Source: Mytilus trossulus
Lineage: Eukaryota
Assembly (NCBI RefSeq): GCF_036588685.1
Contig: NC_086382.1
Coordinates: 32,798,001-32,862,000, forward strand
DNA: 64,000 nt
Direction of reading: 5' to 3'
In this document: positions 8,003 to 33,489 of the stretch, in pieces
How positions within the stretch are numbered: the stretch's first letter is position 1
How the letters are laid out: each line of letters starts with the position of its first letter
Notes under the pieces: generated by a model
Database searches by the model: none
What the model was told of the DNA's origin: nothing
What the model saw: only the letters and a program-made list of their open reading frames with translations
Program-made: the position numbers and the translations under genes

Positions 8003-9644
8003 GGCTATGTGGACTGTTGATGATTTGAAACTTGATATTGTTTTACCTATTTTCACCTTTTTGTATATAAAGTTTCTCTTTATTTTTCAGATATACAAAT
8101 ATAAAGGAGATAAAGTAAAACTATGATTGCCATTTAGACAAATATATCCACCAAAAAAATAAAGTGGGTGTAGGACTGTCTCAGTACTGGAGGTTACATG
8201 TTGCGATTCAGATAATTTGTCGTTGGGTTATTATGTCATTTACGTAAATCAAACATTTTCCTTATAAATATGTTTTGTCTCATCATGGTCTCATAGAAAT
8301 GATTTCACTGTTGTTCAAATGCAAAGCAATTATTATTTTTGTAATATCAGAACCTAGTATCATATATATACTTGCCAAACAAGGTGTCCAAATTGTGAAC
8401 TTGTTATAAAAAATAAATTTTAAACTGGGGGCACGTGGGTACTTTTTTGTTTAAAACCGTGTGTGTTTTTTTATCATTTGTCCTTTGAATTTTCGAGATT
8501 AACTATGTACAACATTATCTTATATCTAATCTGATATTAAGATTCCATATTTTTGGTTAAATCTCTCGTGTAAACTGCAGGGGACGGGATTAAAGCTACA
8601 GGGGACGGGATTAAAGCCGCGATAAGTTTATTTAAACATTACATACTGTTAAATAATGTTTAAAATCAGCATGAATGTTCCTCTTTCATTAATCAAATAG
8701 CTGGATGATAGCACAGCTGGGTGGTTCCTGTTTCAATTCACACCATTACAGTCCTTTTATAGTTAATTCAAATACAAAATAATAATGATATTGCATATTT
8801 TTATGACGCGAGTGAATAAAGCAAGCATGCAATGCCTTTTCGGGATGCCCCATTATATCATAAATGTTTTTCTTTTTAAGTTTATAGTTCCATTTTAAGG
8901 ATTTTAAAATTCATTAGATGTGTACTGCAAATATGCTCATTTTATTTCGCTGACAAAAACGAGCGGAACAGCAGCAGAGTTTCTAACCAGTTGTCACCAT
9001 GTTATTGTCAATTAAGGAAATATTCCTCCGAAAAAATACATATTCTCACAAAAGTTGTTTTTAACGTAACTGTTATTCAGTTTGATAGTTATGATCGGTC
9101 AATGCAATTTACACGTAAATAACCTCTCGAATGTTTTTAATTTTAGTCAAATAAATATTTATGACTGAGACATTTCAGCAGCATACTAAGAATAAATGTT
9201 GGCACTCCTACCACATCTTAATTCTTATATCTATTATATCTGCTTTAAAAAAAATGTTTTAAAGTTAAATCATACATGTAAGATAGAGATAGAGATAATG
9301 TTGATGGCCAATCAAGTTACTAGTATGCTTTCAATTAATAATAACATTATAAACAAATCAGACAATAAAATAATTAAATTTAAATGGTTCATTTGAATAA
9401 TAATTGAATGGATTATACATGTTTTTGTACTGAGGACATGTCCAACTAGATTTGAACAAAGAGAGATAACTCCACATCTTTTTTACATTTCAGATGCGGG
9501 TGGTTTTATTTAGCAATGACTCCCAAATGTGCTGTAAGATCTGGGGTTGAAGTCATAAAACTTTGCTCAGTGCTCTGAGCACAACAATCATGCTCGAAAC
9601 ATGAAATTCAGCATTTTGATTGGTTGATTTTGGAGTAGGAGTAA

Positions 9645-12430
9645 AAAAAACTGTTAAGTTGCCTGGTGTTTCATGTAATGGCGACAAGGTACAGGTACAT
9701 GGACTTGATATAGTAGAAGGTAAGATCGATAGTGATAAAATCTCAGTTTTGAGAGATACAGGTTGTTCTACTGTATTTGTTCATAGTAGGTTTACTAACC
9801 CAGATTGTCTTACAGGTCAGACTAGAGACATATGTTTAGCAGATGGTTCAGTGAAGCAGTGTCCAGAAGTATGTATTAATATTTCTACTCCTTATATTTC
9901 AGGTGATATTATTGCATTGATCTTAGATACACCGTTTGCAGATCTGATTGTTGGAAACTATGTGAACACATCAGTACCACATAGTGTCGATGGTTTATCA
10001 GTGACTAGTGGAGAAGATATTTTTGTTTCAGGTGACTCAGTCCCATGTCATGCAGTTGAGACTCGATCTCGAAAGAAGAAGCAGGATGAAGCAGATATTA
10101 TGATTGATCAGACGAATGTTCAGCGTAGTAGCGATATACCTATATCTCATTCTATAGATTTTTCAGACGTATGCCATGATTTTAAGATTTGTGATAGGAA
10201 GCAGTTGATTGAGTTACAGAAGACAGATGAGACTTTGGATAAGGTAAAATCTTATGTAAGTGATGTGCATGATAACCCAGCATCTTATTTTATATATAAT
10301 TCAGATTTACTATATAGAGTGTATACTAAGCCAAGTGGTGAAGTTATTCAGCAAATTGTATTACCAAGCAAGTTGAGAGGAACAGTTCTTTCGTTGGGAC
10401 ATGATATTCCGTTGGCAGGTCACCTTGGGAATAAGAAAACAAGAGACAGAATCATGCAGCACTTTTTCTGGCCAGGTATATTTAATGATATTGCCGAATA
10501 CTGTAGGTCTTGTCCAGATTGTCAGATAGGTACATCGAAGGGTAGAGTACCACGTGCTCCATTGATTAGCATACCACCTATGGATGAGCCATTTCAGCGC
10601 ATTGCTATTGATTTTGTTGGCCCTTTGCCTATGACTGATGACAAAAACCGTTATGTACTTGTTTGCGTCGATTATTCCACTAAATATCCAGAAGCAATTC
10701 CTTTAAAAGACCAAGAAGCTTCTACAGTCGCTAATGCTCTTATAAGTTTATTTTCTAGAGTTGGCATACCCAGGGAGCTGTTGACAGACCAAGGCAGTAA
10801 CTTTATGTCAGAGCTGATGGTTGAGGTATGTAGACTATTAAAGATAAGTAAGTTACGCACTAGTCCTTATCATGCTATGTGTAATGGACTCTGTGAAAAG
10901 TTTAACGGTGTACTGAAGAAAATGTTGAAGGCATATGCACGACAGACACCAAAAACATGGGATGCATATATCCCCTACTTATTATTTGCATATCGGGAGG
11001 TACCAAATGAGAGTACTGGTTTCTCACCGTTTGAATTGTTATATGGCAGGCACATTAGAGGACCTCTAGCAGTACTTAAAGAAGAGTGGGAAGAGCCTAG
11101 TACATGTCAAAACTCTGTGTTGAGTTATTTATTAGACACTAGAGAAAAGTTGAGAACAATGGCTGAGTACGCCATTGAAAATGAAACAAAAGCGAAACAA
11201 AGACAGAAGTTTTATTATGATAGAAAAGCTAGAGACAGAAAGATTGAAGTTGGTCAAAAGGTGCTTATATTATTGCCTACACATACATCAAAGCTGTTAG
11301 CGAGTTGGAAAGGACCATTTATAGTGACTGATAAAGTTAGTCCTGTTGACTATAAGGTCAAGGTTAGAGGAAAAGACAAAGTATTTCATGTAAATATGTT
11401 GAAGTTATGGCATGAGCGGGTAGATAATGATCTTGATAATAATGTCACAACAGATATTGCTGCGTGCTTAAATGTAATTTCAGGTCTTAACACAGATGAA
11501 GGCACAGATGATAGTGAGATGACTACAGATATAACTCCAGTGTTGAAAAGCAAAGAAAATGTAGATGACGTTACGATCTCACCAGAATTGACAACTGTCG
11601 AAAAACAGCAGCTTAAAGAATTATTATCAGAATATGAAGACATCTTTAGTGACGTACCTAAGGTAACAAATATTATAGAACATAGAGTAGTTACAAAAAC
11701 AGATGAACCGATTTACCAACGTCCGTACCCACTACCATACGCACTTAGAGATAAGGTCAGAGAAGAGATTGACAATATGTTAGCTGCAGGTATAGTTGAG
11801 CCGTCTGACAGTCCGTATGCAGCTCCGATAGTACTGATCAAGAAAAAAGACAACACACTTAGATTTTGTGCCGATTATCGTTCCTTGAACAAACAGACTA
11901 TCTTCGACCCGATTTTTATGCCACGCATGGATGAGGTACTGAATAAAGTCAGCAGAGCACGATATATCAGTAAACTTGATTTAACTAAGGGCTATTGACA
12001 GGTACCACTTGATAAAGATAGCCGACAGAAGAGCGCATTTATAACGCCGTTCGGACATTATCAGTTTACTGTTACTCCATTTGGTATGATGAACTCAGGT
12101 GCTACTTTTGTTCGTATGATGGATAAAGTTCTGGCAGGATACGAGGAATTTGCTGACTCGTTCATTGATGATATTGGTATATTTAGCGATACATGGGAGT
12201 ACCATATTGAGCATTTAAGGGCAGTATTCGATTCACTGAGACAGGCAAACCTCGTTGCAAAACCGAGTAAGTGTTTATTTGGCTACGATGAGCTTGAGTT
12301 TTTAGGACATATTGCCGGCGGTGGCAAGATTAAGCCTGTTCAGGACAAGGTATCTGCTATACATGAATTTCCAGTGCCTGTCACGAAGAAACAGGTGAGA
12401 TCATTTCTCGGTCTGATAGGTTTCTACAAA
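9645..12430 (+). pseudogene. Truncated Gypsy LTR-retrotransposon pol, Gmr1-like order (protease - integrase - reverse transcriptase)
   Basis: Protease LRDTGCS; integrase HHCC (GHDIPLAGH...CPDC), DDE (AIDFVGP, LTDQGSNF, NGLCEKFN) and GPF; then RT (PYAAPIVLIKKKD, RFCADYRSLN, SKLDLTKGY*QVPL, FIDDIGIFS). A single nonsense codon at 11996-11998 (TGG>TGA) with the frame continuing. No gag, RNase H or LTRs seen. Confidence 0.92.
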
Positions 12431-13957
12431 GTTTTCTTCTCGAAAGTTTTATGACTTCAAGACCTTATATCAAATTTAATATAAGTTTTACAACCCTATT
12501 ATATTCGTTAACTTAGTCCCTCACCATAAAAAATCTTTTCTGAAGAAAGCTTGGTGAAATTATTATAGATATGTTTTTTATTCAGATCATTGGTGAATGA
12601 CTTTATACAATTTTCATAATAGATATAGAAAGATGTGGTATGAGTGCCAAATGAGACAACTCTCCAAGTCACATTGAATTAAAGAAAAACATTAAAAGTC
12701 AAACTAAGGGCTATAAAGGACCACACAAATTAATAGTGTAAACTCATCATTCTAACGAGAAAACCCAAGATGAAATCTGTATGAAAAAAAAACAAGAAAT
12801 GAGAAACAAATATGAACATCATATTCTTGTCTTAGGAAAGTTGCAAACAATGTCAGCTGGTGTCAACGTTTAAATGGTACCAAACCTTCACCCTTATCTG
12901 AAGCAAAAGTATAACATCATATACATAAATCACTTGATTTGCTGTATGTTCTTAACTTATTTCCATCTTTAGCTCATTATCATTATTTAGTTCTTCATGT
13001 AAAAGACCTATAAATTATATATAAAATGAAGACTCGAGATAGTTTACAGTTAACAGATTGTATAGACACTTCACACGTCTATTGTGTTGTGAACAGTATG
13101 TTGACCTCTAGAGGCCCTTCTAGGTTTGAAAGCACCGTTGGATTGCTGTCTCATTGACGTTTACACTCAACATCCTTTTTGATATTGTTTTTACCTCTCT
13201 AAAGGTTCTAATCTTTATTCAAGCGTCATGTCTATCAATGAAATCCCCGATTCCAAAATAACTAAACCATGAAAATGAGGTCAAGGTCAGATCATACCTG
13301 CCAGTTGGAAATGTACACCTTACAATACTTCCATACACTAAATATAGTAGACCTATTGTTTAAAATATCTGAAATATGGGCTTAACCTAGTTCACTGATC
13401 CATGCGCTGATATGGTTTTTCGAGGTCGGGGTCAAATGAAAACTGTCTGACATGAACGTTGACTCTGTAAGGTACGCACATACCAAACGCAGTTATCCAA
13501 TAACTCATAATAAGAGGGAAATATTACTACTATCTTTTTTATATATTTATATATATTCTCGTTATGTAGTCTAATAAGCGAAAAATAAAAACAATAAATG
13601 ACAGAAGAACAACCAATATTGACATGTTGAGAAAATAACGGAAAATTAAAATAGTCGCCCTCATAAAAACAGAGTATTATAATTGATATCAATAAAATTT
13701 CTTTGAGAAAATGAAATTAAATAAAGGTAAATAAATAAATAAATACAATAAAAAAAAACATGAAGCCATGTCCCATTTATGTATACCACTTATCAAAAGA
13801 TGTAGATATACGAATAGGAAATAAGATAAGAAATGCACTTCATAAAGTTATTAAATATAAGTATTATTAGTTGCACAGTGTGCGCTATTGAATTTTAAAT
13901 ACGATATATATGGGTCAGTAAATTCCATATGGGTGAGAGCAAACTATACTTATACAG

Positions 13958-14124: not shown

Positions 14125-15565
14125 ATAAAACTCACATGTATGTATAATTTAAAATTTATATGTGGAGCATGATCGGCATTCTGCCTACCCTTCCGGAGCA
14201 CCTGAGCATACCCACATTTTTTGGTGGGGTTCGTGTGTCTTTAGTTTTTTGTATTGAGTCTTGTGTACTATAATTTGTAAGTTCGTCAGTATGTCAGTTT
14301 ATTTTCGATCTATCAGTTTGGATGTCCCTCTGGTATCTTTCGCCCGTCTTCTTTAATAAAAGAACATGTAGAGTGTTGCTTTGAAAAGCAATATCATGGC
14401 TTCTGGTATATCGATTGAAGATAACAAACTTTAATATTATCATGGATTGATCTCTTAGACCCTGCTTGGCTCAGTGTATCAAAACTATAAACTAAAACAG
14501 ATGCTGGTCTGCCCCTTCACCTATATTATCACACTGTTAATATACAAAAATAAGATGAGGTCATAGTGGTGTGATTGTCAAAGATACAACTCTTCACAAG
14601 AAACTAAATGACACAGAAATTAACAACCATAGTTCACCGAAATCCCATACCGCATAGTTTGCTATAACGACTGTTCGAAATGCCAATTGTAAAACAGTTC
14701 AAACGAGAAAAGTAACTAAATTTATGTACAAGATAAATGGAACAAAAACAAATATGCAACACAGCATAAAATGACAACCACTGGGTAACAGGCCTATTTA
14801 TAAACTTCCTGCGTCAAAACAATCAACACAAAAAATCCAACACGATAATATTCAAAGATGTCCTGTTTTTTTTACTTTTGTGGACAAAAGATGTATACAA
14901 AAGTAGATTTAACAGGAAGTGATTACAAGAACTTATACTTGTATACATCGACCTTCATCCGAATCGGTGAAGATATTTAAATACTTGTTTATATAGATAA
15001 ATAAAAATCAGGGTTTCCCAGTGTCATGTAAACATAAATACATACAAAAACTTCCTGTTTGCATGGAGTTGGAGAGCCATTAATTTAATGAGATGCTGTT
15101 CACAATAGATATAATGCAAAAGGAAAATCTAGATTCGTATAGGTTTACGACACAAAACTTAGATAAAATACAATCCTACTTAACTTTTGTAACTCTTATA
15201 TTAACTTTCGAAATTGCATCTTGTAAATGACCGTATAATGTATGTGAACAAAATGTTTGTTTGCTTGTGTTTAAGCGTTATGTTATATATATTTACGGAC
15301 TTTATAATTTGAGGATGCCAGAGTAAATGATGGGACCTTCAACCTTTGCTAGGAAAAAAAGGGGCCTGGGCTGCAAATTGCCAATGCTTTTCATTTAAGA
15401 TAGAACTTGCAACAATAGAGTTGACATTCTAGTATACTAACTGTAGATAAACCACCAATAGTAGACTAGTCAATATGTCACTTAGGGTCGGAGAACAATT
15501 GCGCTTTGCTAATACGGTATTTTAAAAGATATGTTCCCATTTCCTTTTAGATTTAATGACATTAA

Positions 15566-15980
15566 ATGGTAATGGACGTAAGCGGTAACTTTACCATTTA
15601 TTTGTCTGACGGTGGAGATGAAGACGAAAGAAATAAATCGAAACGAGTCATCGAACGCTTGGAAGATTCTAATATTGGAATTATATACGGAGACAGAGAT
15701 TTTATACCCGGATGTATGATACTAGACAACAAAAGAAATGCGGTTCTAAAGTCAGACTTAGTGGTGGTACTTTTGTCCGATAGCTATATAGACTCGACTG
15801 AATGTGTTTATGATGTTGCTTTGGCAATTTGTCTGGAAAGACACATTATCATAATAGACAAAAGAAAAACAAGAAAGATGCCGCCATTATTAAATGAATT
15901 GCCAAAGATAAATGGACGTACAAACTTTGTCAAAGTGTTACAGAAGCTGAAAAGAATGGTTGATGGGTATTATGTAGAAG
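15566..15980 (+). CDS. TIR-CC-DD-CARD-CaaX gene, coding exon 1: TIR domain
   Basis: Box 1-like FTIYLSD, BB loop GDRDFIPG, VVVLLSDSYIDSTECVYDV. Acceptor TTTTAG| at 15550, in-frame TAA upstream of the ATG, phase-1 donor G|GTTAGT. Confidence 0.85.
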
Positions 15981-16708
15981 GTTAGTTCTGTTTTAGAGTT
16001 GTACCTTTTATAAAAAGACTGTTTCAATTCCGAAAGGTTTTGTATGGAAAGCTGTTCTCGTCAAAAATATGATGAGGCCAATTTTCGAGGGGAAAAAAAT
16101 ACATTTAGATTTTTGTCTTTCCATGGTTTTGTTTATGCTTTTTTTAATTATTCATCATTATATGCGACGATTTTGCTAGGACTGGATTTGGATTACTTTT
16201 GTTTATTTTTATGTCTTGTTGAAAAACGCTTTTATTTTTGAATGGTATAAAATACACCTAATCGATATTTGGTACCATCCGAAACAAATGCCCAGTAATT
16301 AAGACAACTTCCTGTTTGGGTCAACCATTGTAACAACAAAAGTCATCAGTATCAAGCTAAGGAAAGAAAATGGTTAAAAAGCAGACATTTTGAAAAACTT
16401 TGATAGATTATGATCCACTTTAAAAAAAAAATGAAAAAAAAAAATGATGCTTTACAAATATTTGTTTTATATATATAAAAAAAAAAGAAAGGTTTATGCG
16501 TAATACATTGTTTAAACTTGTCCCAAGATAGATGTTAACTGGATGTAAAAGTTGTGTAATTTCTGATCTTTTTCGGATTGGAGTAAAAAGCAATATGGTG
16601 TATTAGTTTAAATTCTTCGTATACTTTATATCGGCATGAAATATTTGCAACTGAACGTTAAGTATAGAAACCAGCAATCAATCCTATATTTTGTTTGAAT
16701 ATTTACAG

Positions 16709-17013
16709 AAAAAAATCAATCAAGGAATAGGAAAGACGATGCACAGATATATATCAGGGAAGTGGAACGAACAGCTACTTTAGAAAATGAACAAGGATTT
16801 CAAAAACAGATTCTTAGACTACAGGCTCAAATAACGCATACCCAAAGAGACAAGAAAATAGCAAAACACATTGCGATTGTAGATGGAAATAACGACTTTG
16901 ACAACTTTCACCATGAACAAACAATTAGATACCAGTTGGAGAAAAGGATAAGAGAAATGGAGAACCATATACAAAAACTCAGAAGAGAAAACGTTTTGCT
17001 AAAGCATCCAGTG
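16709..17013 (+). CDS. TIR-CC-DD-CARD-CaaX gene, coding exon 2: predicted coiled coil
   Basis: Acceptor TTTACAG| (phase 1) and donor GTG|GTAAGT (phase 0). Heptad-like segments FQKQILRLQAQI and LEKRIREMENHIQKLRREN. Confidence 0.78.
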
Positions 17014-17446
17014 GTAAGTTCGCAACATAGGCACTGTCACAGAATAAAAACTTGTATTTCATAATAATTTCAGAGACAAGTGCCTGATTCGCAAGTTTTC
17101 TTTCGTAGTTTCTTATGTTAGACATGGAAATATGTCATAACTTTGTTTGCCTTCTTTTACATCAATTACAATATTCTCTGGGGCAGTATGGCGATTAAAA
17201 GAATGACAAATAAAAACAGCGTGTTCATTTGAATTCCATATAATTACATTATATGTATTTTTCATTATAATACGTCATTCTGATTGGCTAACAGTACATC
17301 ACGTGTTATTCCTTAAGCAATTGCATCACTCAATAAAACTTTACATTCATGATAACACGTGGTTCCACAAAAAAAGTGCACAGGTGAATTAAATTAAAAA
17401 AATATAAAATTCGTGTTTTTATGATCATAGCTAAAAAATGTAATTA

Positions 17447-17604
17447 TAAGTATTGAATGCTTCTTTTTGTAACTTCATAGGGTTGTAAAAGCGTGACCGT
17501 GCGTACATTTTTAGAATGATGCGCTTCAGCGCTTCATGCAAAATGTACTTCGGTCAACGTTTTTACACCCCAATAAAGTTACAAAAAGAAGCATTCAATG
17601 CTTA
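17447..17604. repeat. Long imperfect hairpin at the end of a non-autonomous element (~17255-17604), intronic
   Basis: TAAGTATTGAATGCTTCTTTTTGTAACTT... is mirrored by ...AAGTTACAAAAAGAAGCATTCAATGCTTA. Confidence 0.75.
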
Positions 17605-17778
17605 AATGAATAATGATACAAAATAAAATATGGGGTTTACATAAATCATATCAGACTGATATTAAAGGGAAGTAACTCAACGAACATAAATCAAAGTACG
17701 TAAAGTACTATATATATAAGAACACTGTTTGATACAAAAAAAAGACACTAGTTTAAAAGAATTTTATTTTACGTCAAG

Positions 17779-17968
17779 GTTTCTGTTAGTCCAATGGATG
17801 ATAGACCTTCACAGCAAACTCCATTTCAAGAAATTCAAAAGCAGATAAACCAGGTTTTGATTGAAATATCAAATCTGAGTCATAATAATGAAGACAGCCT
17901 GGATACTACAAGCTACAGAATTCCGTCTGAATTGAGATCATTTTGTCAAAAATATGAGGAAATGATTG
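17779..17968 (+). CDS. TIR-CC-DD-CARD-CaaX gene, coding exon 3: linker and first helix of the death domain
   Basis: Acceptor TCAAG| (phase 0) and donor G|GTATGT (phase 1); frame matches both neighbours. Confidence 0.72.
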
Positions 17969-18403
17969 GTATGTATATACATTTGTTAACCGTTAGTGGC
18001 CTGAGGGGACGACCATTTATTTTTTTTGTGCCCTGGGGAGGGGAGGGAAGGTAGAATGATTTTGTAAATGAATGTTTGGCCTGTTAAGAATGAAATAGAT
18101 AAAAATAGATAACCAATGGAAGATTTAGAAAAAAAAGTCCGAGTCACTTAAGTTTAGAAGTTTTATTTGAGATGCCATGGTGATGGCGTTAACATGTTAC
18201 AAAATGTGAAATATGACTGATTGAAATCTTTCAAAATAGGTGAAAATTTGTATAGAAAGCACGTATAATCTCCGAAAAGAGTTCTTTGTTTTGTCTTTCA
18301 ATCTGACATCAAATCTTCAATTTTAAATTCATTGATTTAAAAAAAAACCAACACCTATATATATCTTATAATAAATTTGATTTGAATGAACTTTTTCACC
18401 CAG

Positions 18404-18598
18404 GTCCAAATATTTGCCGACTGGGAAGAATTCTTCATTTATCAAACCATCAGATCGATAAAGTAGAAGAGTGCAGGGAGTATGGTTATGTTGAAATGTT
18501 TTGGCAGACGATAAAGTTTTGGCAGTCAAACGAAAGCTCTGATGAAAGCTTTGTGACGTTACTGAATGCATTAGAAGACATTGGTGTTGATATAGGAG
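18404..18598 (+). CDS. TIR-CC-DD-CARD-CaaX gene, coding exon 4: death domain
   Basis: GPNICRLGRILHLSNHQIDKVEE...EMFWQTIKFW...SFVTLLNALEDIG fits the death-domain pattern. Phase 1-1 exon (CCCAG| ... G|GTAAAC). Confidence 0.8.
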
Positions 18599-19110
18599 GT
18601 AAACTTTAATACTATATGAATTACTGAAGCTGCGCGGGAACGCAAAAAAAGACTACGCTTATGTACTTTTGCATAAAAAGTTCAACAATAAAAAATATAG
18701 TTTATAGTACTTTTAAATCAATCAATGATGAAAGAAATTTGAAAGAAATATAGTAAACTCTACAAGGTTAGAGATGAGTGTAAAAATTTCAAACACGTTT
18801 AATAATATCAGATCATTACATGACATTTTTCATATCAAATGTATTATCAGCCCTATGTTCAACATCATCTTAAGAGCCGCATAGCTCGAGGGCTGATAAT
18901 ACATGCGATGTGAAAAATTACATGTTATGATTTTTTTATGTTATGCTTCAACAATGGAGAAAAATAACAGATTCATATATTGATCCTTTTATGTGGTTCC
19001 AAAATAGAAGTTCAAAGATTGAAAAGTTCCCGGACGTCGGACCCCAAATTAAAAGCTTAACAACTTTTTCAGAAATTAAATAATATACACGACTCTTTGA
19101 TATGATTTAG

Positions 19111-19383
19111 GGAAGCCAATGTCAAAGACAGAAGTGAGAATACTCCAGGAGAAGATTCCATTCATATTGAACAATATTTACCAAGTAAATGATTTGATAC
19201 CATACCTGATATCTCAGCACGTGTTAACGCACGTGACTGAGATGTTTATCAGAGAACCTAGGAATAAAGAGGAAAGACTATTGCGTTTAATCAACGTTCT
19301 CACAACAAAACACTATGGAATTAAGGCCCTCTGTAATGCCCTTATCCATACAAATCAGGAATTTATAGCAGACGAGATATCAC
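19111..19383 (+). CDS. TIR-CC-DD-CARD-CaaX gene, coding exon 5: CARD
   Basis: ILQEKIPFILNNI.QVNDLIPYLISQHVLT...IREPRNKEERLLRLINVL...ALCNALIHTNQEFIADEI fits the CARD pattern. Phase 1-1 exon (TTTAG| ... C|GTGAGT). Confidence 0.83.
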
Positions 19384-19900
19384 GTGAGTATATATTGACA
19401 TAGTAGACAAACTGAGGTCTGCTTTAACTTCCTCAGATATACTTCGGAGTAAGCTGGTCCGCCGTTCCAACTAAACTCCGCACCGAAGTGTAGCAATAAT
19501 TTAACACAACAGGGGTAAAGTTTATACTAGAGAGCTCAAATGAGCTCTTACATTTAGGGATAGATCTAAGATTTTTCATAAGGGGCGTAATTCCATTAAA
19601 TGGACAAAAAAACCCGACTTGAGCGTAGAGAGGGTAAATTTGTTTTGAAGATTTTATGCTAAAACGATTGTTCCAATCAAAGGTGTATGCGTGCGCCCTC
19701 TTCTCCCTTTGAATCATCTTTTAATTAGATATAGGAAGATGTGGTATTAGTGCCAATGATACAACTCTCCATTCAAATAACAATTTATAAAAGTAAACCA
19801 TTTAAACTGAGAATATTTTCCATAATATAATTTATAAGCTATAACCGTGAGAAATACAGTAATATTGCATGTGGGCTTAACAATTATTATTTTCTTGTAG

Positions 19901-20181
19901 GTTCTATGCCAAATATACCAACAAGCCGTTTCCCTGTTGAATTAACTGATGAAAGCTGCGATTCTCAATGGAGTTCAGATGAATCTAAATTACAAGTGGC
20001 ACGTGTTGCACCAATCACCGCTACAGTTAATTCGGTAACACCAAATGTGCACCTTGAACAAAAACATCAAGGTCAGAATGAAGACTTAAGTAACACATGT
20101 GTTGATGGAATTCAGCAATTAATCAAGAAAGACTCTAAGGAAAAAACTGTAAAATCCCGTAGGGGTTGTAGTATTCAATAG
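19901..20181 (+). CDS. TIR-CC-DD-CARD-CaaX gene, last coding exon: low-complexity tail ending in a basic patch and CaaX box
   Basis: Acceptor TTCTTGTAG| (phase 1). Ends KKDSKEKTVKSRRGCSIQ*. AATAAA at 20684. Confidence 0.78.
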
Positions 20182-23036
20182 TACAAGTCCCCGTCACGAA
20201 TTAATAGTGTGCATAGTAGTCAAAATATACCGCCGTAGACATTTCCTTAACAGTAACAATATAATTCAATACCGTTTATAGTACAAATGTACAAATATAT
20301 AGTAACTGTAGTCAGATGGCTCATTGAGGTCTTGCATGTTATAGTGCAAATTTGGACACTTGAGAAAATGTGACTAGGACTAAATATTTTATATATACAT
20401 TTGTAGTTATGCATTTTGAAATTTTCCCAATGACCATGAATAAGACTGTGAAGATCAGATACCGTACTTCACATAAAACAGATCACGACAGTCGAAATAT
20501 ACAACACTTATATATCAAGAAAGGATAAAAAAAACTTTAAAAAATTAGTATGAAGTAAAAGTTTCAGTTGCAAATTAATACATAAATGTTATTTTTTTGT
20601 ACATGATATATTTTTCTGTAAATTATTATGTGCTGTTATTGTAATTTTTACTTGACTGTTGTTTTGTTTTGCGGGTTACCGTGAATAAAGATAAAGTTAT
20701 TATATAAAAATAAGGTATATTTATATATTTATTAAATATGAGTGTTTATGAATCAGATACAATCCGATGATGCAGATGCGAAATATTAGGGTTAAAAATA
20801 TGGAATGTTTGTTATAGAGGGTAAAAAGAAAGAGGGATCTGGGAATTAAGAAAGGGAAAAGTGGGCAGTACTGTATATTTACGACTTAATTCACGGCCTA
20901 GCTTTTCTGGCAAAACAGCCTTTGAACGTCATTGCCATCTCTGACTATTTCGACTTGAGAGTTTGAAAGGTCCTTTTGTCAGTCCTCTTTCGGCTCCCCT
21001 TGCATGTAAGTTCGGCTACAGCGAAGAACTATGCGAAACTATTTTCGCCGGGTAGCTTATATTTATAAACATTTCTTTAAAGTAAAATGTCACAATCACT
21101 ATTATTAACCAGCTGGCGTCTCAAAGGTATTCAACAATTGACCCCAAATCTTAAAAAAAATAACCTTAAAGAAGTGACAGTTGTGGGTACGATAGTAAAC
21201 ATCATACACGAGTCTATGGATTTATGATTATTGCCAATTTCACATAAGATTATTACACTTTAAAAGAAATCATTGGTCACTAAAACTGATATTACACACT
21301 TGACTCGATTTCACTTCCCTTTTTAAAAAAAAGTTCAAGTATTAAAATAGTGAATCGAGTGTAAGTAAATATAAAGTAACCATACCCAACTATATCAGTC
21401 CTATTCAGGACCGGTAACTCTGTCGATAGATATTATAGGGTATACAATATTGTTAAACCAGATCATACGTCTCTGCTGGAATTTGTACAATAACTCTTTT
21501 TTTAACACAATTTAAACTTTATATCGATTCATTGCCTGGATTTAGCTTTAAATATTGAATTAAAAGATAAATAACAATAAAATCATATTCAATGTTCGAA
21601 ATTCATTTAAATTAAAATTTGAATCAGTATATTTCTTTGAAATAATTATAGAAACATATAAATATTTGAATGCCTTTTAAGCAAAACATATTTTTTTAAA
21701 GAAATTTTCATAATATTAATATTCTCCTAAAGTTTATTATGAACCATTCGTCTTCTGATTTGACACGGGAAGGAGAAGATATTTATTTGTACATTTATGA
21801 AAACTTTTGTATATCACAAAATTTAAACTCTGGTAATACAAGTATACACACTGACAGGATGTTGAATGTCACCTGATTGCTTTTGGTTTGCACGTCTACC
21901 TGACAATATATTATGATGTAACATTTAACCCAAGATAGATTTCACCTGTCCGGCCAAGGAATGTAAAGGTATAGAATATTTATCTTTTGTAATTGGACAT
22001 CTTTTTTTTTCTCTTAGGATAATTTTATTTTTGTTCTTAAAGGAATGTATAATATATTTCTAAAGAAAAAGAAAATATACAGATAACTTTAAAACATTTT
22101 TAAAAAAAGATGAGATTTTTTTTTATTATAGATATTGTAAACTTTCTGGTAATAGTATCTCCTGGATGAATATCTGTCAAAATAAATGTTCCCGTGTCAC
22201 ACTTAAAATATTTTTTTTTTATTAAGAAATTTTGAAATCTTTGATATCGAAATATCACTAAAGGAAAATAACAGAAACATCGGCGATTTTTTTATGAATA
22301 ATTATTTATAATCTAGGAAAGTCTTACTTAGAAAATTCCACTCATTGATTTGATGCAACATTTCAATATGATACATCAGCCGCCATTTTGGAAAATCTCG
22401 GAAAATTCCCCATTTTAAATCGATGTTTGACCGAATTTGCCCTGAAATTAAACTGTTTTAAGTAGTATTTTTCGCCAGCTATATGTTTGAATATACTTGA
22501 TCGATTTGCAAAGTTTGTGTTTTATTTACAGAATTTCTTTATTTGTTGTAAAAGTAGACATGGGTATCGGTAATTTAGCATTGAGTCAACGGAGAAATGA
22601 CGAGAAAAAGTGCATGTTTTACGATGTCGATTTGACCGAAGTTAATCAAAAATTAAACTGTTAGGACCAACATTGTTTGATAGAAATATGTTTGAATATC
22701 AAGGATTGATTTGCAAAAGTAAGAAAACGGATCAGGTTTATGAGAAAATTAAACTTTATTGAAGCATATATGCATTTTATATGGGGAAATATAATACAAA
22801 ATGGCGGATATTATACGTCACAAAAGTCACGTGATGTCTAACTTAGTTGGATATGTTTGTCCTACTGTTTATTTCTTTATGATGTTGTATAATTTATAAA
22901 ATTGGTACACCTACCGTGTTGATTTATATTTACGCTTTATGTGGGTGTCATAGAACAAATATTGGTCTCTTCTGCATGTTCCTGTTCTTAAATATAAGTC
23001 GCAAGGAAACCCAACGTATACTCCAGGTCAAACGAT

Positions 23037-27018: not shown

Positions 27019-27507
27019 TTACTCAAGGTATAACATGTAGCAAGTTGCCACGATCACACTATCCCCAAGTGGCACAGTCACAGATGTGTGTGTGTCTGTA
27101 GAGTTATTCCATAAACATCTACTTCCAACAGAAATTGTAGCATTTTCTTGAACAATAGTCACGTGCACTATTATTCTAAATCGACTGTTAAAATACTCCG
27201 CTTTGATTCGTTGTCTTATGGCATCACTCAGTCGCGTGCAGAGAAAACCACGCCCCTCTTTATCTAAGAAATCTTCCTCCTCTCCGACAACCACCTCCAA
27301 TATGGTATTGTTCATGATACTATTGACAATTGTGGTTGCGATAGTGTCATCCGGTGCCATTCTGTATGTATTCTCATAACGAATTTTAGGTTCTTCGCTC
27401 GTTTCAGTTCGGCTACTGTCATCATCTCTCTTAAAGATGTGAGGAGACTTGATAACGTTTCTAACTAAATTAGAAAATCGACTAAGTCTTGGGAGACTCG
27501 TTTCCAT
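27019..27507 (-). CDS. Tctex1-domain protein (dynein light chain Tctex-type), paralogue 1, single coding exon
   Basis: IRYENTYRMAP ... RFRIIVHVTIVQ ... VGSRCLWNNSTD ... ATCYMLYLE. Confidence 0.9.
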   Translation of the reverse strand: METSLPRLSRFSNLVRNVIKSPHIFKRDDDSSRTETSEEPKIRYENTYRMAPDDTIATTIVNSIMNNTILEVVVGEEEDFLDKEGRGFLCTRLSDAIRQRIKAEYFNSRFRIIVHVTIVQENATISVGSRCLWNNSTDTHTSVTVPLGDSVIVATCYMLYLE

Positions 27508-28396: not shown

Positions 28397-29962
28397 ATGG
28401 CGTCCGATGTGAATGGACGTACATGTAAGACGACAGGTGTTGATTTGTCTGATACAAGTATTATGTCTGATGTAGGAGCTGATAAAAGTGGTAACGTAGA
28501 TTCCTTTTACAATATGAATGACACTTTCAAGCAATACTCCCCACAGAATAGTCAGATAGTGCATATATTAACAGAAATCGGCACCCCTGTCCGCCAAAAT
28601 GTAAACAATGACGACTCCATTGTTGATAGTCAAGATTCTCAAGACAGTAGTCAAGGGACACATTTTATACCTAACCAAGATTTTATTGCGATGTTAGACC
28701 TTGAATTGATAGATCTTCCTAGAGACTCATATATTGTAAAATTAATTGAATTAACGAATGATTCTGATGATACTATAACATGGTATAGGAGTATGTTGAC
28801 CAGTCGAGCCAAGTCAATACAGGGGTGTCCTTTAGGGAAATTAATCACGAGGAAAAGTACAAACAGAGGTTCATCCTCTCAAAAGTATGCAAAAGACTGT
28901 TACTTATTACAGCAATTTATTTCTGGCGACCCGTCTAGCATTGATGAAGTTTTTCGTAAGGACGAACCTAAATCTGTAAGCGAACATAACACAGTACCGC
29001 TGAATTGCCATCTCATAGAACTAAAAACAACGCTTCATATGACTATTGATAGGTTGAACGAAGTTGAAAAGTTGGGTAAAGCTAACCGTACAGTGATTGA
29101 AAAATTACAAACTGAGAATGAGAAGTTGAGACGAGAATTAGAAGACTCAAACGAGAGACTGAGTAAGCATATTGTATTCAGCGAACGTAAATACACGCAA
29201 TACGAAGCGAACTTAAAATTATTAAATCAGCAATCAAAAGCAATTGGTGAATTTGATTTTAATATGTATTCAGAAAAAATTAAACAGATAGACAGTGAAC
29301 AAATACGACATAGCAAACTACTTCTAAGTGCACAAAAAAGTTTTAACGAACTAAAAATGTCGTGTCAACAGTCGTACGCAACAAAAGTTAACCCACACAT
29401 TACCCCAGATAACATTCCGGTCAGTTCTACTGATAGTACAACTCAGAGTTATAATTCACGAATGCGATCACCCGAATCGGAGATTTCTAACGGTACAGTT
29501 AAAGAATCACAACAAACACACGAAACACTCCGTACAAATGTCCTTGCAAAAAAAGACGACAGTTATAAAAGTGATGAACCAACGACGTTCAAAATACCTG
29601 TTCGCTTACAGGGTTCCACTGCAGCAGTTCAGTCCACTGATGACAACTTCTTTACTGGTGTTTCACGGAAAAAGTCCGCAAGATATTACTTGTCAGGAAT
29701 TGATTCGAAGTCAACCCGTTCCGGAATTATGACTTATTTAGAGAGTAGAAATGTGCAAGTGACATACCTGAGATTGTTTCAATCGCGAAATAGTTTACGC
29801 TATGTGTCTGCTAAATTGAACGTATCCGAACACTGTGCTGATATTATTGAAGGGGAAAACTTTTGGCCTAGTGGTGTGCATTGTAGGAAGTGGCTTAGTA
29901 ACCAGGCGTGGTATCAACGAAGCTCCGAGGTTCCAAGCGACCCAAAACAAGGCGAAAACTAA
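28397..29962 (+). CDS. LINE ORF1 (coiled coil plus C-terminal RRM-like domain)
   Basis: 521-aa ORF with a central heptad region and the C-terminal YYLSGID...SAKLNV...FWPSGVHCRKW motif typical of LINE ORF1 proteins. Confidence 0.85.
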   Translation: MASDVNGRTCKTTGVDLSDTSIMSDVGADKSGNVDSFYNMNDTFKQYSPQNSQIVHILTEIGTPVRQNVNNDDSIVDSQDSQDSSQGTHFIPNQDFIAMLDLELIDLPRDSYIVKLIELTNDSDDTITWYRSMLTSRAKSIQGCPLGKLITRKSTNRGSSSQKYAKDCYLLQQFISGDPSSIDEVFRKDEPKSVSEHNTVPLNCHLIELKTTLHMTIDRLNEVEKLGKANRTVIEKLQTENEKLRRELEDSNERLSKHIVFSERKYTQYEANLKLLNQQSKAIGEFDFNMYSEKIKQIDSEQIRHSKLLLSAQKSFNELKMSCQQSYATKVNPHITPDNIPVSSTDSTTQSYNSRMRSPESEISNGTVKESQQTHETLRTNVLAKKDDSYKSDEPTTFKIPVRLQGSTAAVQSTDDNFFTGVSRKKSARYYLSGIDSKSTRSGIMTYLESRNVQVTYLRLFQSRNSLRYVSAKLNVSEHCADIIEGENFWPSGVHCRKWLSNQAWYQRSSEVPSDPKQGEN

Positions 29963-29973
29963 AAACTTTCACA

Positions 29974-32900: not shown

Positions 32901-33489
32901 TATGGATATCTTATATAAATATTATCTTCATGAATATGTGATTATCTTTATGCGAGATGGAGTTTTCCCTTCAAAACAATCTTGGAAAATTATAGTAAAT
33001 AATACGGTAGACAAAGTACAAACTGATGAATGGACTCGTCGAATACAGAGTGACAATAACTTTTCTCGTTTTAGAAATATTCACCTCTCGGTCAAAGTCC
33101 CTGATTTCTGGAAATGCGCTAGATCATCAAGAGAAATCATAAACGCATACTTCATAACAAAATTACTAACTGACATCCCTAACAACACGGGAAGTACTTG
33201 CGAGCTATGTGACAGACCGTTTCTAGATGTGTACGTACATGCGTGTTGTAGTTGTTGTGGTACTCAATCAATCAGAGATGTATGGTGGGATTTCATTATT
33301 GAAAGGTTTCCATTGGAATTATTTGTCGAACTGTATTCATATGATGATGAACAGTTATATTGCATTCTTTTGGGCAAGCACATATCAACAGTAAATATCG
33401 ACACTGACAGTTTTCTTAGTTTGTGCCACGTACACGTTGCACTCTGTGTTGCTGAGTATAGCAGAGTAACGAGAAAGATGATACAGTAG
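29974..33489 (+). CDS. LINE ORF2: APE endonuclease, reverse transcriptase and C-terminal Cys/His motif
   Basis: AWNVRG, ISEH, AGDLNA, SDHLPV; NYRPVSLL, FLDSKKAFDTV, QGGVLSG, LADDI; CELC...H...C. First ATG at 29974; the frame is open from 29902. Confidence 0.93.
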   Translation: MKRTIISNVVLFLNVLLILFFMSSIKLVAWNVRGIMSSTICLSKLVKDTDCDICVISEHKLKERSLHYLSTIERGYNCISKADALPIGYNAYHGKGGIAILYKTSLQFSVNEISDINSSRIAGIELKNQSYGSLFIFGAYLPSDDSIENYKSELNILDNLYTYYSVYGNCIIAGDLNASCLGKDRSMSNNYKSKELLKFVSRHHLLYAGGEIQIKGPNYSYITKQTMLDYILCNESMYRKLRYYEILDEGKISSTSDHLPVVAEFVIDSNPHRVMNSCDKLPAWHKVSDAQINEYKKLLNDPVDMLIDKIRSFSYVDIDAINDEFVNILHTAADIAIPKCGFNPHTKPYWNADVKRAHDNERSKRRCWVLEGRPRGMHFDSYLMYKRAKSEFRRVQQLANEQYIQSCYDDLNETAECDVRLFWKQIKRFKGRSSKVYPEIVYENKVYNTPESVANCFAEYFHDIYQPKDENNFDNDFKCSIESTYNDIIKTCGVEGEYLPGGLITEKEVTELIGQLKYRKAAGHDRVQNEHLRHGGISVVKCVTAIFNIIVKKGRIPQDWKLGLLVPIFKGGTKCKTSPDNYRPVSLLSCILKLFESVIKARLINFVLFDKNIPNLQQQGFQKYLSCLTASFNLHETIYHNLELFSKIFVAFLDSKKAFDTVWRIGLMYKLYNIGVTGKMWSVINDCHVGTMSSVVVNQCHSDFFPVLQGVRQGGVLSGLLYLIFINEMLVELEKCNQKTGVYHIASCSPALADDISCIGTTPSGLQRMLDTCTDYANRWRFCFNAKKSCVMQFSLNPREVRLQHDWHIANSVLPLAEDFTHLGIELNYKFRSTERTSNSCRRGKNSFFALNGVCLKSANPCVLLKLYKSIVLPTVLYGCEMWTNLKSNDIATLNCFQHFIVKRILDLRTSTRSDMCQSILGLHPITSTIEIKKLYFLQKLCSLDGKFLTKKLFLVRLYSYFIDTERKHYGFIQEIMDILYKYYLHEYVIIFMRDGVFPSKQSWKIIVNNTVDKVQTDEWTRRIQSDNNFSRFRNIHLSVKVPDFWKCARSSREIINAYFITKLLTDIPNNTGSTCELCDRPFLDVYVHACCSCCGTQSIRDVWWDFIIERFPLELFVELYSYDDEQLYCILLGKHISTVNIDTDSFLSLCHVHVALCVAEYSRVTRKMIQ

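What the first reader, a model, noticed from the sequence alone, without database searches (positions are those of the whole stretch)
15566..20181. Six small ORFs splice into one TIR - coiled coil - death domain - CARD protein
Seen: exons 15566-15980, 16709-17013, 17779-17968, 18404-18598, 19111-19383 and 19901-20181 all have canonical AG/GT sites, their phases match (1,0,1,1,1), and they sum to 1659 nt (552 aa plus stop). Known: MyD88 is DD-TIR, RAIDD is CARD-DD and ASC is PYD-CARD. Inference: N-terminal TIR followed by both DD and CARD is an architecture I do not recognise. It could link TLR/TIR signalling to IRAK/RIP-type death-domain partners and to caspases in one self-oligomerising adaptor, combining myddosome and PIDDosome/inflammasome-like roles.
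Basis: partly seen in the sequence, partly recalled or inferred. Interest (0 to 1): 0.9.

Follow-up and report, generated by a model that had tools for sequence, protein, structure and literature searches.

The report
Mussel TIR–zipper–death domain–CARD adaptor gene
This is a real, transcribed six-exon mussel (Mytilus) gene for one 552-residue protein that joins three immune or cell-death docking domains (TIR, death domain, CARD), a dimerising zipper and a probable lipid anchor. It is listed in public databases only as "uncharacterized", its CARD is not annotated, and nothing is known of its function.

Summary
All six exons are open in the stated phases, all five introns are GT..AG, and the total is 1659 nt. 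Single intron-free contigs from public runs cross all five junctions exactly, in two Mytilus species.

The model is identical to RefSeq XP_063403437.1, "uncharacterized protein LOC134687233", Mytilus trossulus. Orthologues at 89-90% identity exist in M. edulis and M. californianus, with two incomplete models in M. galloprovincialis.

- **TIR:** passes Pfam's threshold and is closest to the TIR domains of TLR1/2/6/15.
- **Death domain:** passes Pfam's threshold, and a profile built with paralogues hits only solved death domains, FADD best.
- **CARD:** fails Pfam's threshold (20.5 vs 23.9 bits). It is nevertheless a CARD by profile-profile comparison (98.5%) and by fold (pLDDT 94; Apaf-1 CARD Z 15.2, TM 0.87).

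I add three points:
- A leucine zipper at residues 208-237 is predicted to form a parallel dimer.
- A basic patch and a CaaX box (CSIQ) at the C-terminus are invariant.
- The DD|CARD exon pair recurs in three TIR-less genes, which suggests the gene arose by exon shuffling.

The gene is single-copy and I found it only in Mytilus. Function is inferred: a membrane-tethered adaptor linking TIR signalling to death-fold partners. I class it as a new variant of a known kind, of moderate interest. The scan has noted many other unusual death-fold genes in this genome.

The parts
15550..15565 (+). 5'UTR part of the first coding exon. The AG acceptor is at 15548-15549. It contains a 10-codon out-of-frame uORF starting with ATG at 15555.
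   Evidence: Contigs X1 and X2 begin to match at 15550 after 51 and 82 unmatched letters; sequence read.
15566..15980 (+). Exon 1 CDS, residues 1-138 plus 1 nt: the complete TIR domain. The start ATG has A at -3 and G at +4.
   Evidence: Pfam TIR 33.2 bits (cut-off 21.3) and TIR_2 30.8 bits (cut-off 28). The PDB profile search puts TLR15/2, TLR6, TLR2 and TLR1 TIRs first (E from 2.9e-6) and MyD88 at 0.011.
15695..15712 (+). BB-loop motif RDFIPG (residues 44-49), including the conserved proline of signalling TIRs.
   Evidence: Aligns with RDFKPG/RDFIPG of TLR TIRs; position.
16709..17013 (+). Exon 2, residues 139-240: helical coiled-coil region.
   Evidence: Only weak coiled-coil or zipper Pfam hits (Shugoshin_N, TSC22, PKcGMP_CC, DivIC); helices 149-160, 166-191 and 202-234 in the model.
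16915..17004 (+). Leucine zipper, residues 208-237. Heptad a/d positions are L215, I219, M222, I226, L229, N233 and L236.
   Evidence: Homodimer prediction: ipSAE 0.34 vs best control 0.01, partner pLDDT 75-76, at least 91% of contacts shared between runs, in-register i:i contacts at exactly these residues.
17779..17968 (+). Exon 3, residues 241-303: linker helix and the first death-domain helix.
   Evidence: On P0001 the Pfam Death match starts at residue 302 at profile position 13, which places helix 1 in exon 3. Helix 290-303 appears in the model. The equivalent exon precedes the DD exon in paralogues.
18404..18598 (+). Exon 4, residues 304-368: death-domain core (phase 1-1).
   Evidence: Pfam Death 23.5 bits for the exon alone and 25.6 bits on P0001 (cut-off 22.6). 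A profile with three paralogous exons hits only solved DDs: FADD 3.7e-7, RIPK1 2e-4.
19111..19383 (+). Exon 5, residues 369-459: the complete CARD in one symmetric (phase 1-1) exon.
   Evidence: Pfam CARD 20.5 bits, below the 23.9 cut-off. hhalign against 8 Mytilus CARD exons: 98.5%, E 2.3e-15. AF2 pLDDT 94.1 with helix 1 broken. Foldseek: Apaf-1 CARD TM 0.87, rmsd 1.4 A. VIA: Z 15.2, top 33 entries all CARDs.
19901..20181 (+). Exon 6, residues 460-552 plus TAG: a tail with a near-invariant block at 471-500, a basic patch at 535-547 and the CaaX box.
   Evidence: Alignment A1; conservation counts.
20167..20178 (+). C-terminal CaaX box CSIQ (residues 549-552), a candidate farnesylation site.
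   Evidence: Invariant in all six Mytilus sequences. A terminal C..[SMQAC] occurs in 0.4% of shuffles.
20182..20504 (+). 3'UTR, minimum extent. The first AATAAA is at 20684.
   Evidence: Contigs X1 and X2 run to 20504 and X5 to 20552.

Best explanation
This is a single-copy, Mytilus-restricted protein-coding gene (RefSeq LOC134687233 of M. trossulus). It makes one spliced mRNA for a 552-residue cytosolic adaptor with six parts. (1) An N-terminal TIR domain of the TLR type, with the BB-loop proline kept. (2) A helical region ending in a leucine zipper that probably forms a parallel dimer. (3) A linker. (4) A death domain closest to those of FADD and RIPK1. (5) A CARD directly abutting it, closest to Apaf-1, CED-3/CED-4 and caspase-9. 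(6) A tail ending in a basic patch and the CaaX box CSIQ. Most likely mechanism (inferred): farnesylation and the basic patch hold a zipper-paired TIR dimer at a membrane. Activated TLR or other TIR assemblies recruit it by TIR-TIR contacts. The clustered DD and CARD then seed death-fold assemblies with DD proteins and with CARD proteins such as the expanded CARD-caspases of mussels. That would couple TIR sensing to caspase and/or NF-kB outputs within one protein. Likely origin: a TIR exon joined to a coiled-coil-DD-CARD gene of a family whose DD|CARD exon pair survives in three TIR-less genes on another chromosome. Shown here: gene structure, splicing, domain identities, conservation, paralogy. 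Model-level only: dimerisation. Inferred: lipidation, all partners and all outputs.
For: - **Splicing and expression:**, in two species. No retrocopy in the genome.
- **Identity to an annotated protein:**
- **TIR:**
- **DD:**
- **CARD:**
- **Zipper dimer:** (ipSAE 0.34 vs best control 0.01; partner pLDDT 75-76; at least 91% of contacts shared). The mark was reached by 17 of 29 eukaryotic proteins solved as pairs of one chain and 0 of 30 solved as single chains.
- **Purifying selection on the three domains:** among the four full-length orthologues, pairwise identity is 93-94% in TIR, DD and CARD against 83-84% in coiled coil, linker and tail.
- **CaaX and basic patch:** invariant.
- **Paralogous DD|CARD exon pairs with the same boundary:** ..IGVDIGG|KPMSK.. 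here and ..IGIDIVRG|DKPMPE.. on C14. They pass Pfam Death at 28.2 and 25.9 bits (the third scores 21.0, below the 22.6 cut-off) and Pfam CARD at 27.1-28.7 bits. No similarity to this TIR exon was found in the 10 kb upstream of them.
- **Candidate partners exist:** 12 CARD-caspases in M. coruscus (PMC10967218).
- **Precedent for membrane-targeted TIR adaptors:** arthropod MyD88 has a phosphoinositide-binding domain (PMC7075850).
Against: - No functional datum exists for this protein or any orthologue.
- The CARD is below Pfam's curated threshold. The orthologue-only profile (A1) found no solved CARD at E<=10.
- The AF2 CARD model used an alignment containing bona fide CARD paralogues, which biases it toward that fold.
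- The full-length AF2 model is unusable (pLDDT 36). The DD fold is therefore not confirmed structurally, and the Pfam match ends at profile position 74 of 86, so a sixth helix may be missing.
- The dimer pass may reflect memory of generic zippers.
- Farnesylation is predicted from a four-residue motif only.
- Tissue and conditions of expression are unknown because the run metadata are coded.
Confidence: 0.68

Rival explanations
1. Reverse polarity. The DD and CARD are the input: upstream CARD or DD sensors, such as the many STAND/ROCO/RLR-type death-fold proteins of this genome, recruit them into filaments. The clustered TIR is the effector, an NAD+-cleaving enzyme as in SARM1, plant TNLs and bacterial TIR systems.
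For: TIR oligomerisation activates NADase TIRs in several kingdoms (established knowledge; also noted in the abstract of PMC7075850, listed). The zipper and the death-fold domains would supply the clustering. Earlier scan notes list many CARD-bearing sensors in this genome (leads only).
Against: The TIR is closest to scaffold-type TLR TIRs. At the position of the Glu in the WCxYEL motif, the residue used by NADase TIRs according to my own knowledge, it has Asp83 (ECVYDV) in every orthologue covering that region. Neighbouring Mytilus TIR exons keep the Glu.
Confidence: 0.1
2. Decoy or negative regulator. By offering a TIR, a DD and a CARD without any enzymatic output, the protein sequesters TLR/MyD88 TIRs, DD kinases or CARD-caspases and dampens signalling, as CARD-only and short MyD88 forms do in vertebrates.
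For: No catalytic domain was found. A M. galloprovincialis model lacking the in-frame CARD exon exists (P0056), which hints at modular isoforms. The death domain may lack its last helix.
Against: All three domains are equally well conserved. Dimerisation plus a membrane anchor fit an assembly seed as well as a decoy. No CARD-less junction was among the joints listed.
Confidence: 0.17
3. Annotation or assembly artefact: the exons belong to separate genes or to a decaying pseudogene, and the fusion is not a functional unit.
For: The region is rich in transposons and the introns hold high-copy repeats.
Against: Single contigs span all junctions in two species. The 552-554-aa frame is intact in M. 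trossulus, M. edulis and M. californianus and in a Logan-derived sequence. The folded domains are more conserved than the linkers.
Confidence: 0.02

Closest known systems
MyD88 (death domain - intermediate domain - TIR adaptor)
   Same: A cytosolic adaptor combining a TIR with a death domain. The nearest protein-language-model neighbours are MyD88 clusters (score 0.75-0.76, a lead only). It presumably works by TIR-TIR recruitment followed by death-fold assembly.
   Different: The domain order is reversed, with the TIR N-terminal. The TIR is closer to TLR TIRs than to MyD88 (E 2.9e-6 vs 0.011). The DD is closest to FADD/RIPK1, not MyD88/IRAK. It also has a zipper, a CARD and a CaaX box. It is not an orthologue.
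RAIDD/CRADD (CARD - death domain adaptor of the PIDDosome)
   Same: Pairs a DD with a CARD in one small adaptor, so it could bridge a DD platform to a CARD-caspase. RAIDD's CARD is among the CARD profile's hits (E 3.6e-4; Z 9.4).
   Different: The order is DD then CARD, directly abutting. It also carries a TIR, a zipper and a lipid-anchor motif. The CARD is closer to Apaf-1, CED-3/CED-4 and caspase-9 than to RAIDD.
Domain-shuffled 'direct connection' immune proteins of amphioxus, sea urchin and bivalves (e.g. TIR-NACHT, TIR-NB-ARC-WD40, ecTIR-DC families; NLRs with juxtaposed Death and CARD)
   Same: A lineage-specific recombination of promiscuous TIR, Death and CARD modules that shortcuts immunity and apoptosis networks (PMC2575513; PMC2858798; PMC8662601; ecTIR-DC family 6 with ARM-Death-TIR-TIR, PMC6836662).
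   Different: None of the held papers names a TIR-DD-CARD protein (string search). This one is genus-restricted, short, dimeric by prediction and probably prenylated.
Sorting adaptors TIRAP/MAL and TRAM; arthropod MyD88 C-terminal lipid-binding domain
   Same: TIR adaptors positioned at membranes by a lipid-binding or lipid-modified segment (arthropod MyD88: PMC7075850; MAL and TRAM from my own knowledge). The basic patch plus CSIQ would do the same job.
   Different: The anchor would be a K-Ras-like polybasic plus farnesyl C-terminus, which I do not know of in any TIR adaptor. It is unverified.

Membership tests
TIR domain (Pfam PF01582 / PF13676) | Profile score above the curated threshold over most of the domain | tested here: met
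   TIR 33.2 bits (cut-off 21.3) and TIR_2 30.8 bits (cut-off 28) for exon 1; 30.2 and 28.6 bits on P0001.
TIR domain, scaffold (TLR/MyD88) type | BB-loop RDxxPG with the conserved proline; best similarity to receptor or adaptor TIRs | tested here: met
   RDFIPG at residues 44-49. Solved TLR15/2, TLR6, TLR2 and TLR1 TIRs are the best hits, then MyD88.
TIR domain, NADase type (SARM1, plant and bacterial TIRs) | Catalytic glutamate in the alpha-C motif | tested here: not met
   The aligned position (WCxYEL of TLRs) is Asp83 (ECVYDV), invariant in orthologues. Equivalence to the SARM1 or plant catalytic Glu rests on my own knowledge. Enzyme activity is not testable here.
Death domain (Pfam PF00531) | Profile score above the curated threshold; similarity to solved DDs | tested here: met
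   25.6 bits on P0001 and 23.5 bits on exon 4 (cut-off 22.6). Profile A5 hits only DDs: FADD 3.7e-7, RIPK1 2e-4, ankyrin, p75NTR, TNFR1.
Death domain (Pfam PF00531) | Six-helix bundle fold | tested here: inconclusive
   The full-length AF2 model has pLDDT 30-38 in this region. Five helices are predicted at 290-362. The Pfam match ends at profile position 74 of 86, so helix 6 is uncertain.
CARD (Pfam PF00619) | Profile score above the curated threshold | tested here: not met
   20.5 bits for exon 5 and 18.6 bits on P0001, against a cut-off of 23.9. E-values are 4.8e-4 and 1.9e-3, covering profile positions 13-81 of 85.
CARD (Pfam PF00619) | Homology to bona fide CARDs by profile-profile comparison | tested here: met
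   hhalign of exon 5 against 8 Mytilus CARD exons: probability 98.5%, E 2.3e-15, 88 columns. Four of those exons were run through Pfam and pass CARD at 27-47 bits. The joint profile hits Apaf-1 CARD at 8e-12 and only CARDs.
CARD (Pfam PF00619) | Six-helix death fold with a broken or kinked helix 1, closer to CARDs than to DD, DED or PYD | tested here: met
   AF2 pLDDT 94.1, helix 1 split at residues 13-15. All Foldseek matches listed, down to rank 50, are CARDs or designs modelled on the Apaf-1 CARD; TM 0.87. VIA gives Z 15.2-9.4 for 33 CARD entries and Z 9.4 or less for DD, DED and PYD. Caveat: the alignment contained true CARDs.
MyD88 orthologue | N-terminal DD, intermediate domain, C-terminal TIR; MyD88-type TIR | tested here: not met
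   The order is TIR...DD-CARD and the TIR is nearer to TLRs.
CaaX-prenylated proteins | Cys four residues from the C-terminus with a permissive a-a-X; actual lipid modification | tested here: inconclusive
   The motif CSIQ is present and invariant, preceded by a basic patch. X = Q and a2 = I fit farnesyl-transferase rules (my own knowledge). The modification itself cannot be tested with these tools.
ecTIR-DC families of Gerdol et al. 2017 | Assignment by sequence and architecture to one of the catalogued bivalve TIR-DC families | not testable with these tools
   The paper is not held. Citing papers describe only families 6, 11, 13 and 14.

The most novel reading that the evidence does not exclude
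Mussels possess a farnesyl-anchored, zipper-dimerised TIR adaptor whose fused FADD-like DD and Apaf-1-like CARD let an activated Toll-like receptor recruit and activate CARD-caspases directly. That would be a one-protein TLR-to-caspase shortcut combining myddosome-like and PIDDosome/apoptosome-like assembly, with no counterpart described in any animal.
Probability: 0.22. Interest if true: 0.8.

Novelty: new variant of a known kind. Interest (0 to 1): 0.5.

Why it matters
TIR, DD and CARD are the three main homotypic docking modules of animal innate immunity and cell death. In vertebrates they are spread over separate adaptors (MyD88, RAIDD, ASC), and I found no description of one protein carrying all three.

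If the protein works as its domains suggest, mussels wire pathogen sensing to caspases through a single membrane-tethered adaptor. Mussels lack adaptive immunity and are unusually disease-tolerant. Such a protein would be a natural test of the 'direct connection' idea proposed for amphioxus.

The gene is also a clean example of exon shuffling: the whole TIR sits in one exon, the whole CARD in one symmetric exon, and the DD|CARD module is shared with TIR-less paralogues. It further shows that standard annotation misses divergent mollusc CARDs.

Against this, bivalve genomes hold very many such recombined immune genes. This one is genus-restricted and has no functional data.

Tried and rejected
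- **Joining the exons.** Full-length work used P0001, a database protein returned that proved identical to the model.
- **Full-length AF2 with the six-sequence orthologue alignment.** Mean pLDDT was 36. I used it only for secondary structure and did not search folds with it.
- **Orthologue-only profile (A1) against PDB sequences.** It found TIRs and a weak FADD hit (E 0.19) but no CARD, so the CARD call needed paralogues.
- **The search for homologous proteins on the whole protein and on residues 285-462.** It returned only the same six Mytilus sequences.
- **Exhaustive HMMER of the TIR exon against 1.84 billion representatives.** Only three clusters scored below 1e-10. The two non-Mytilus-named ones (P0002, P0003; about 50% identity) are TIR-exon-only fragments of unknown organism.
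- **Literature.** Strings such as TIR-DD-CARD, TIR-CARD and CARD-TIR gave 0 papers. Gerdol et al. 2017 and one PMC id (PMC2493400, given from memory for an amphioxus immune-gene paper) are not held.
- **NCBIfam.** Nothing.
- **ESM Atlas.** Only MyD88 clusters at 0.75-0.76, below the level that means anything.
- **TRAF6-type motif PVELTD at 471.** It fits PxExx[Ac/Ar], but one hit is what shuffles give (0.32 expected, P 0.28). I keep it only as a lead because it lies in an invariant block.
- **Nearest TIR exons in the genome** (C2 tandem array, intron-less TLRs). They are about 33-37% identical and not informative about origin.

Full report
**What is there**

The window is Mytilus trossulus chromosome-scale contig C10:32798001-32862000 (species name). 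The phases after exons 1-5 are 1,0,1,1,1. All five introns begin GT and end AG behind pyrimidine-rich tracts. The total is 1659 nt, i.e. 552 codons plus TAG.

**Is it one transcript?**

Yes. I laid four public runs on 14750-20650.
- One 2049-nt contig (X1) and one 2080-nt contig (X2) run from 15550 to 20504 with all five introns removed at exactly the predicted sites. They differ from the window at one base (19163).
- A 3131-nt contig from a second, diverged organism (X5) has the same five junctions.
- Three shorter contigs of X7 cover junctions 1, 3 and 5.

The runs are only guessed to be RNA. However, the genome holds each exon once and has no intron-less copy, so intron-free contigs can only come from spliced RNA.

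The contigs start to match at 15550, right after an AG, with 51 and 82 unmatched letters before it. A 5'UTR exon therefore lies upstream of 14750. In X5 the leader instead continues colinearly upstream, which suggests an alternative 5' end.

**It is an annotated but unnamed protein**

An exhaustive HMMER search with the TIR exon against 1.84 billion representatives returned a 552-aa protein, P0001, at 100% identity.
- All six exon translations are exact substrings of P0001 at residues 1, 140, 241, 305, 370 and 461.
- P0001 is XP_063403437.1, 'uncharacterized protein LOC134687233 [Mytilus trossulus]'.
- Its precomputed Pfam annotation lists TIR and Death but no CARD.
- Orthologues exist in M. 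edulis (554 aa, 90%), M. californianus (552 aa, 89%) and a Logan assembly (552 aa). M. galloprovincialis has two incomplete models. One of them, P0056, lacks exactly exon 5, which is an in-frame skip.
- Beyond these, only two TIR-exon fragments of about 50% identity from unnamed sources scored below 1e-10. Both end at the same exon boundary.

From here on, full-length analyses use P0001.

**The domains**

*TIR (residues 1-138, all in exon 1).*
- Pfam TIR scores 33.2 bits against a threshold of 21.3, and TIR_2 30.8 against 28.
- The orthologue profile matches solved TIRs of TLR15/2, TLR6, TLR2 and TLR1 best (E from 2.9e-6). MyD88 follows at 0.011.
- The BB-loop RDFIPG with its proline is kept.
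- At the Glu of the TLR motif WCxYEL the protein has Asp83 in every orthologue covering that region. Other Mytilus TIR exons keep Glu.

*Coiled coil (exon 2).*
- Pfam gives only weak zipper-type hits at residues 214-238.
- The heptad a/d positions read L215, I219, M222, I226, L229, N233, L236.
- Two copies of residues 145-242 are predicted to form a parallel, in-register dimer with exactly these residues in i:i contact.
- ipSAE was 0.34 (runs 0.35, 0.34, 0.33) against a best control of 0.01. Partner pLDDT was 75-76, and at least 91% of contacts were shared between runs.
- That mark was reached by 17 of 29 eukaryotic proteins solved as pairs of one chain and by 0 of 30 solved as single chains.
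- This supports self-association but does not prove it. A generic zipper may pass from memory.

*Death domain (about residues 290-368, exons 3-4).*
- Pfam Death scores 25.6 bits on P0001 and 23.5 on exon 4 alone, against a threshold of 22.6.
- A profile of exon 4 with three paralogous exons hits only solved death domains: FADD 3.7e-7, RIPK1 2e-4, then ankyrin, p75NTR and TNFR1.
- The fold itself is unconfirmed. The full-length AF2 model is poor (pLDDT 36), and the Pfam match stops at profile position 74 of 86, so the sixth helix is uncertain.

*CARD (residues 369-459, exactly exon 5).*
- This was the weakest claim: Pfam CARD scores 20.5 bits, below the 23.9 threshold.
- The genome search found eight other CARD-like exons. 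The four I ran through Pfam pass the CARD threshold at 27-47 bits.
- Exon 5 alone aligns to a profile of those eight at 98.5% probability, E 2.3e-15, over 88 columns.
- The joint profile hits only solved CARDs, with Apaf-1 best at 8e-12, then CED-3, BCL10, CARD8, caspase-9, NOD1 and RAIDD.
- AF2 on exon 5 with that alignment gives pLDDT 94.1 and six helices, with helix 1 broken in two, the CARD hallmark.
- In Foldseek, all matches listed down to rank 50 are CARDs or designs modelled on the Apaf-1 CARD; Apaf-1 gives TM 0.87 and rmsd 1.4 A.
- An exhaustive structural search gives Z 15.2 (rmsd 1.2 A, 87 residues) for the Apaf-1/caspase-9 CARD entry. The first 33 entries are all CARDs. DD, DED and PYD folds follow at Z 9.4 or less.
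- Caveat: the alignment contained true CARDs, which biases the model toward that fold.
- I accept the CARD.

*Tail (residues 460-552).*
- The block 471-500 is almost invariant.
- The end, KKDSKEKTVKSRRGCSIQ, is a basic patch followed by a CaaX box. The box is invariant in all six sequences, and a terminal box of this form occurs in 0.4% of shuffles.
- An earlier scan note (s1-830144) had proposed this anchor. I checked only its conservation and chance level.
- PVELTD at 471 fits a TRAF6-type motif but is numerically at chance level.

**Conservation and origin**

Among the four full-length orthologues, TIR, DD and CARD are 93-94% identical. The coiled coil, linker and tail are 83-84%. This fits purifying selection on all three modules.

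The gene is single-copy. Three genes on contig C14, at 27.78, 48.896 and 48.920 Mb, carry a helix-1 exon, a DD exon and a CARD exon in the same order. Their DD|CARD boundary matches..IGIDIVRG|DKPMPE.. there and ..IGVDIGG|KPMSK.. here.
- Pfam Death scores 28.2, 25.9 and 21.0 bits. The third is below the 22.6 cut-off.
- Pfam CARD scores 27.1-28.7 bits.
- I found no similarity to this TIR exon in the 10 kb upstream of any of them.
- One of them appears to start directly with a basic, coiled-coil exon.

The simplest reading is that a TIR-encoding exon was joined to a coiled-coil-DD-CARD gene before the Mytilus species diverged.

The neighbours in the window are transposons, four intron-less Tctex-1 ORFs and a satellite. 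None is an immune gene.

**How it most likely works (inference)**

Every module is a homotypic docking device, and no catalytic domain was found. I propose the following sequence:
1. Farnesylation and the basic patch hold the protein at a membrane.
2. The zipper pairs two TIR domains.
3. TIR-TIR contacts recruit the dimer to activated TLR or TIR assemblies.
4. The clustered DD and CARD nucleate death-fold assemblies with DD proteins and with CARD proteins.

Mussels have an expanded set of CARD-caspases, 12 in M. coruscus (PMC10967218).

Two rivals remain.
- **Reverse polarity.** The death-fold domains are the input and the TIR is an NADase effector. The Asp at the Glu position and the TLR-like TIR weaken this reading.
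- **Decoy or inhibitor.** The protein sequesters partners rather than signalling.

An artefact is excluded.

**Comparison and novelty**

- The protein is not MyD88: the order is reversed, the TIR is TLR-like and the DD is FADD-like.
- It is not RAIDD: the order is reversed and there are extra modules.
- It belongs to the known phenomenon of lineage-specific recombination of TIR, Death and CARD modules in invertebrates (PMC2575513, PMC2858798, PMC8662601, PMC6836662).
- No held paper names a TIR-DD-CARD protein. The main bivalve catalogue (Gerdol et al. 2017) is not held, so prior classification cannot be excluded.
- Earlier scan notes list many other unusual death-fold genes in this same genome, so this is one of a crowd.

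I rate it a new variant of a known kind, interest 0.5.

Noticed in passing
window 54782-64000 (runs off the window end): A satellite array of more than 9.2 kb with a 180-bp unit (357-bp higher-order period), 92-93% matches and about 52 copies. GC is 0.42 with a strong GC skew of +0.3, against about 0.33 in the rest of the window.
   Followed up: partly
window 27019-27507, 36121-36621, 47098-47664, 52636-53223 (all minus strand): Four intron-less ORFs of 162-195 aa, each with a C-terminal Tctex-1 (dynein light chain) domain (Pfam 50-91 bits). They are spaced about 6-11 kb apart and interleaved with LINE elements: a tandem family or a set of retrocopies.
   Followed up: partly
window 28397-33489 and 39379-43938 (+): Two LINE-type retrotransposons with long open frames: an ORF1-like frame plus an endonuclease/reverse-transcriptase ORF2 of 1193 and 1103 aa. 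Observed only.
   Followed up: partly
window 9620-12454 (+): An LTR-retrotransposon fragment directly upstream of the gene: an integrase ORF of 792 aa followed by a reverse-transcriptase piece. The unlocated 5'UTR exon of the adaptor gene lies upstream of 14750, possibly near this element.
   Followed up: no
window 17114-17704, 18887-19083, 19675-19871 (introns 2, 4 and 5): High-copy repeats that are very abundant in the RNA-type contigs, with summed word depth in the thousands to tens of thousands against about 30 for the exons. The one in intron 2 contains a long hairpin-like inverted repeat around 17460-17600, resembling a MITE or SINE.
   Followed up: no
window 50904-51429: A tandem repeat of a 53-bp unit, 10 copies, 92% matches.
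   Followed up: no
G000:C14:27782503-27785800, C14:48895743-48900800, C14:48920133-48923900 (loci L015/L026, L010/L024, L013/L025): Three TIR-less genes with the same helix-1 | death-domain | CARD exon arrangement as the window's gene. Two of them lie 24 kb apart. They look like a small coiled-coil-DD-CARD adaptor family (DD then CARD, the reverse of RAIDD). I did not identify their full models.
   Followed up: partly
P0056 (M. galloprovincialis model), corresponding to window exon 5, 19111-19383: A public gene model that skips exactly the CARD exon, which stays in frame (phase 1-1). It could be a CARD-less isoform or an annotation gap. No such junction was among the joints listed.
   Followed up: partly
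G000:C2:49617706-49651681: A tandem array of at least three partial TIR exons about 17 kb apart. They begin at the BB loop (DRDFIPG) and keep the WCQYE glutamate.
   Followed up: no
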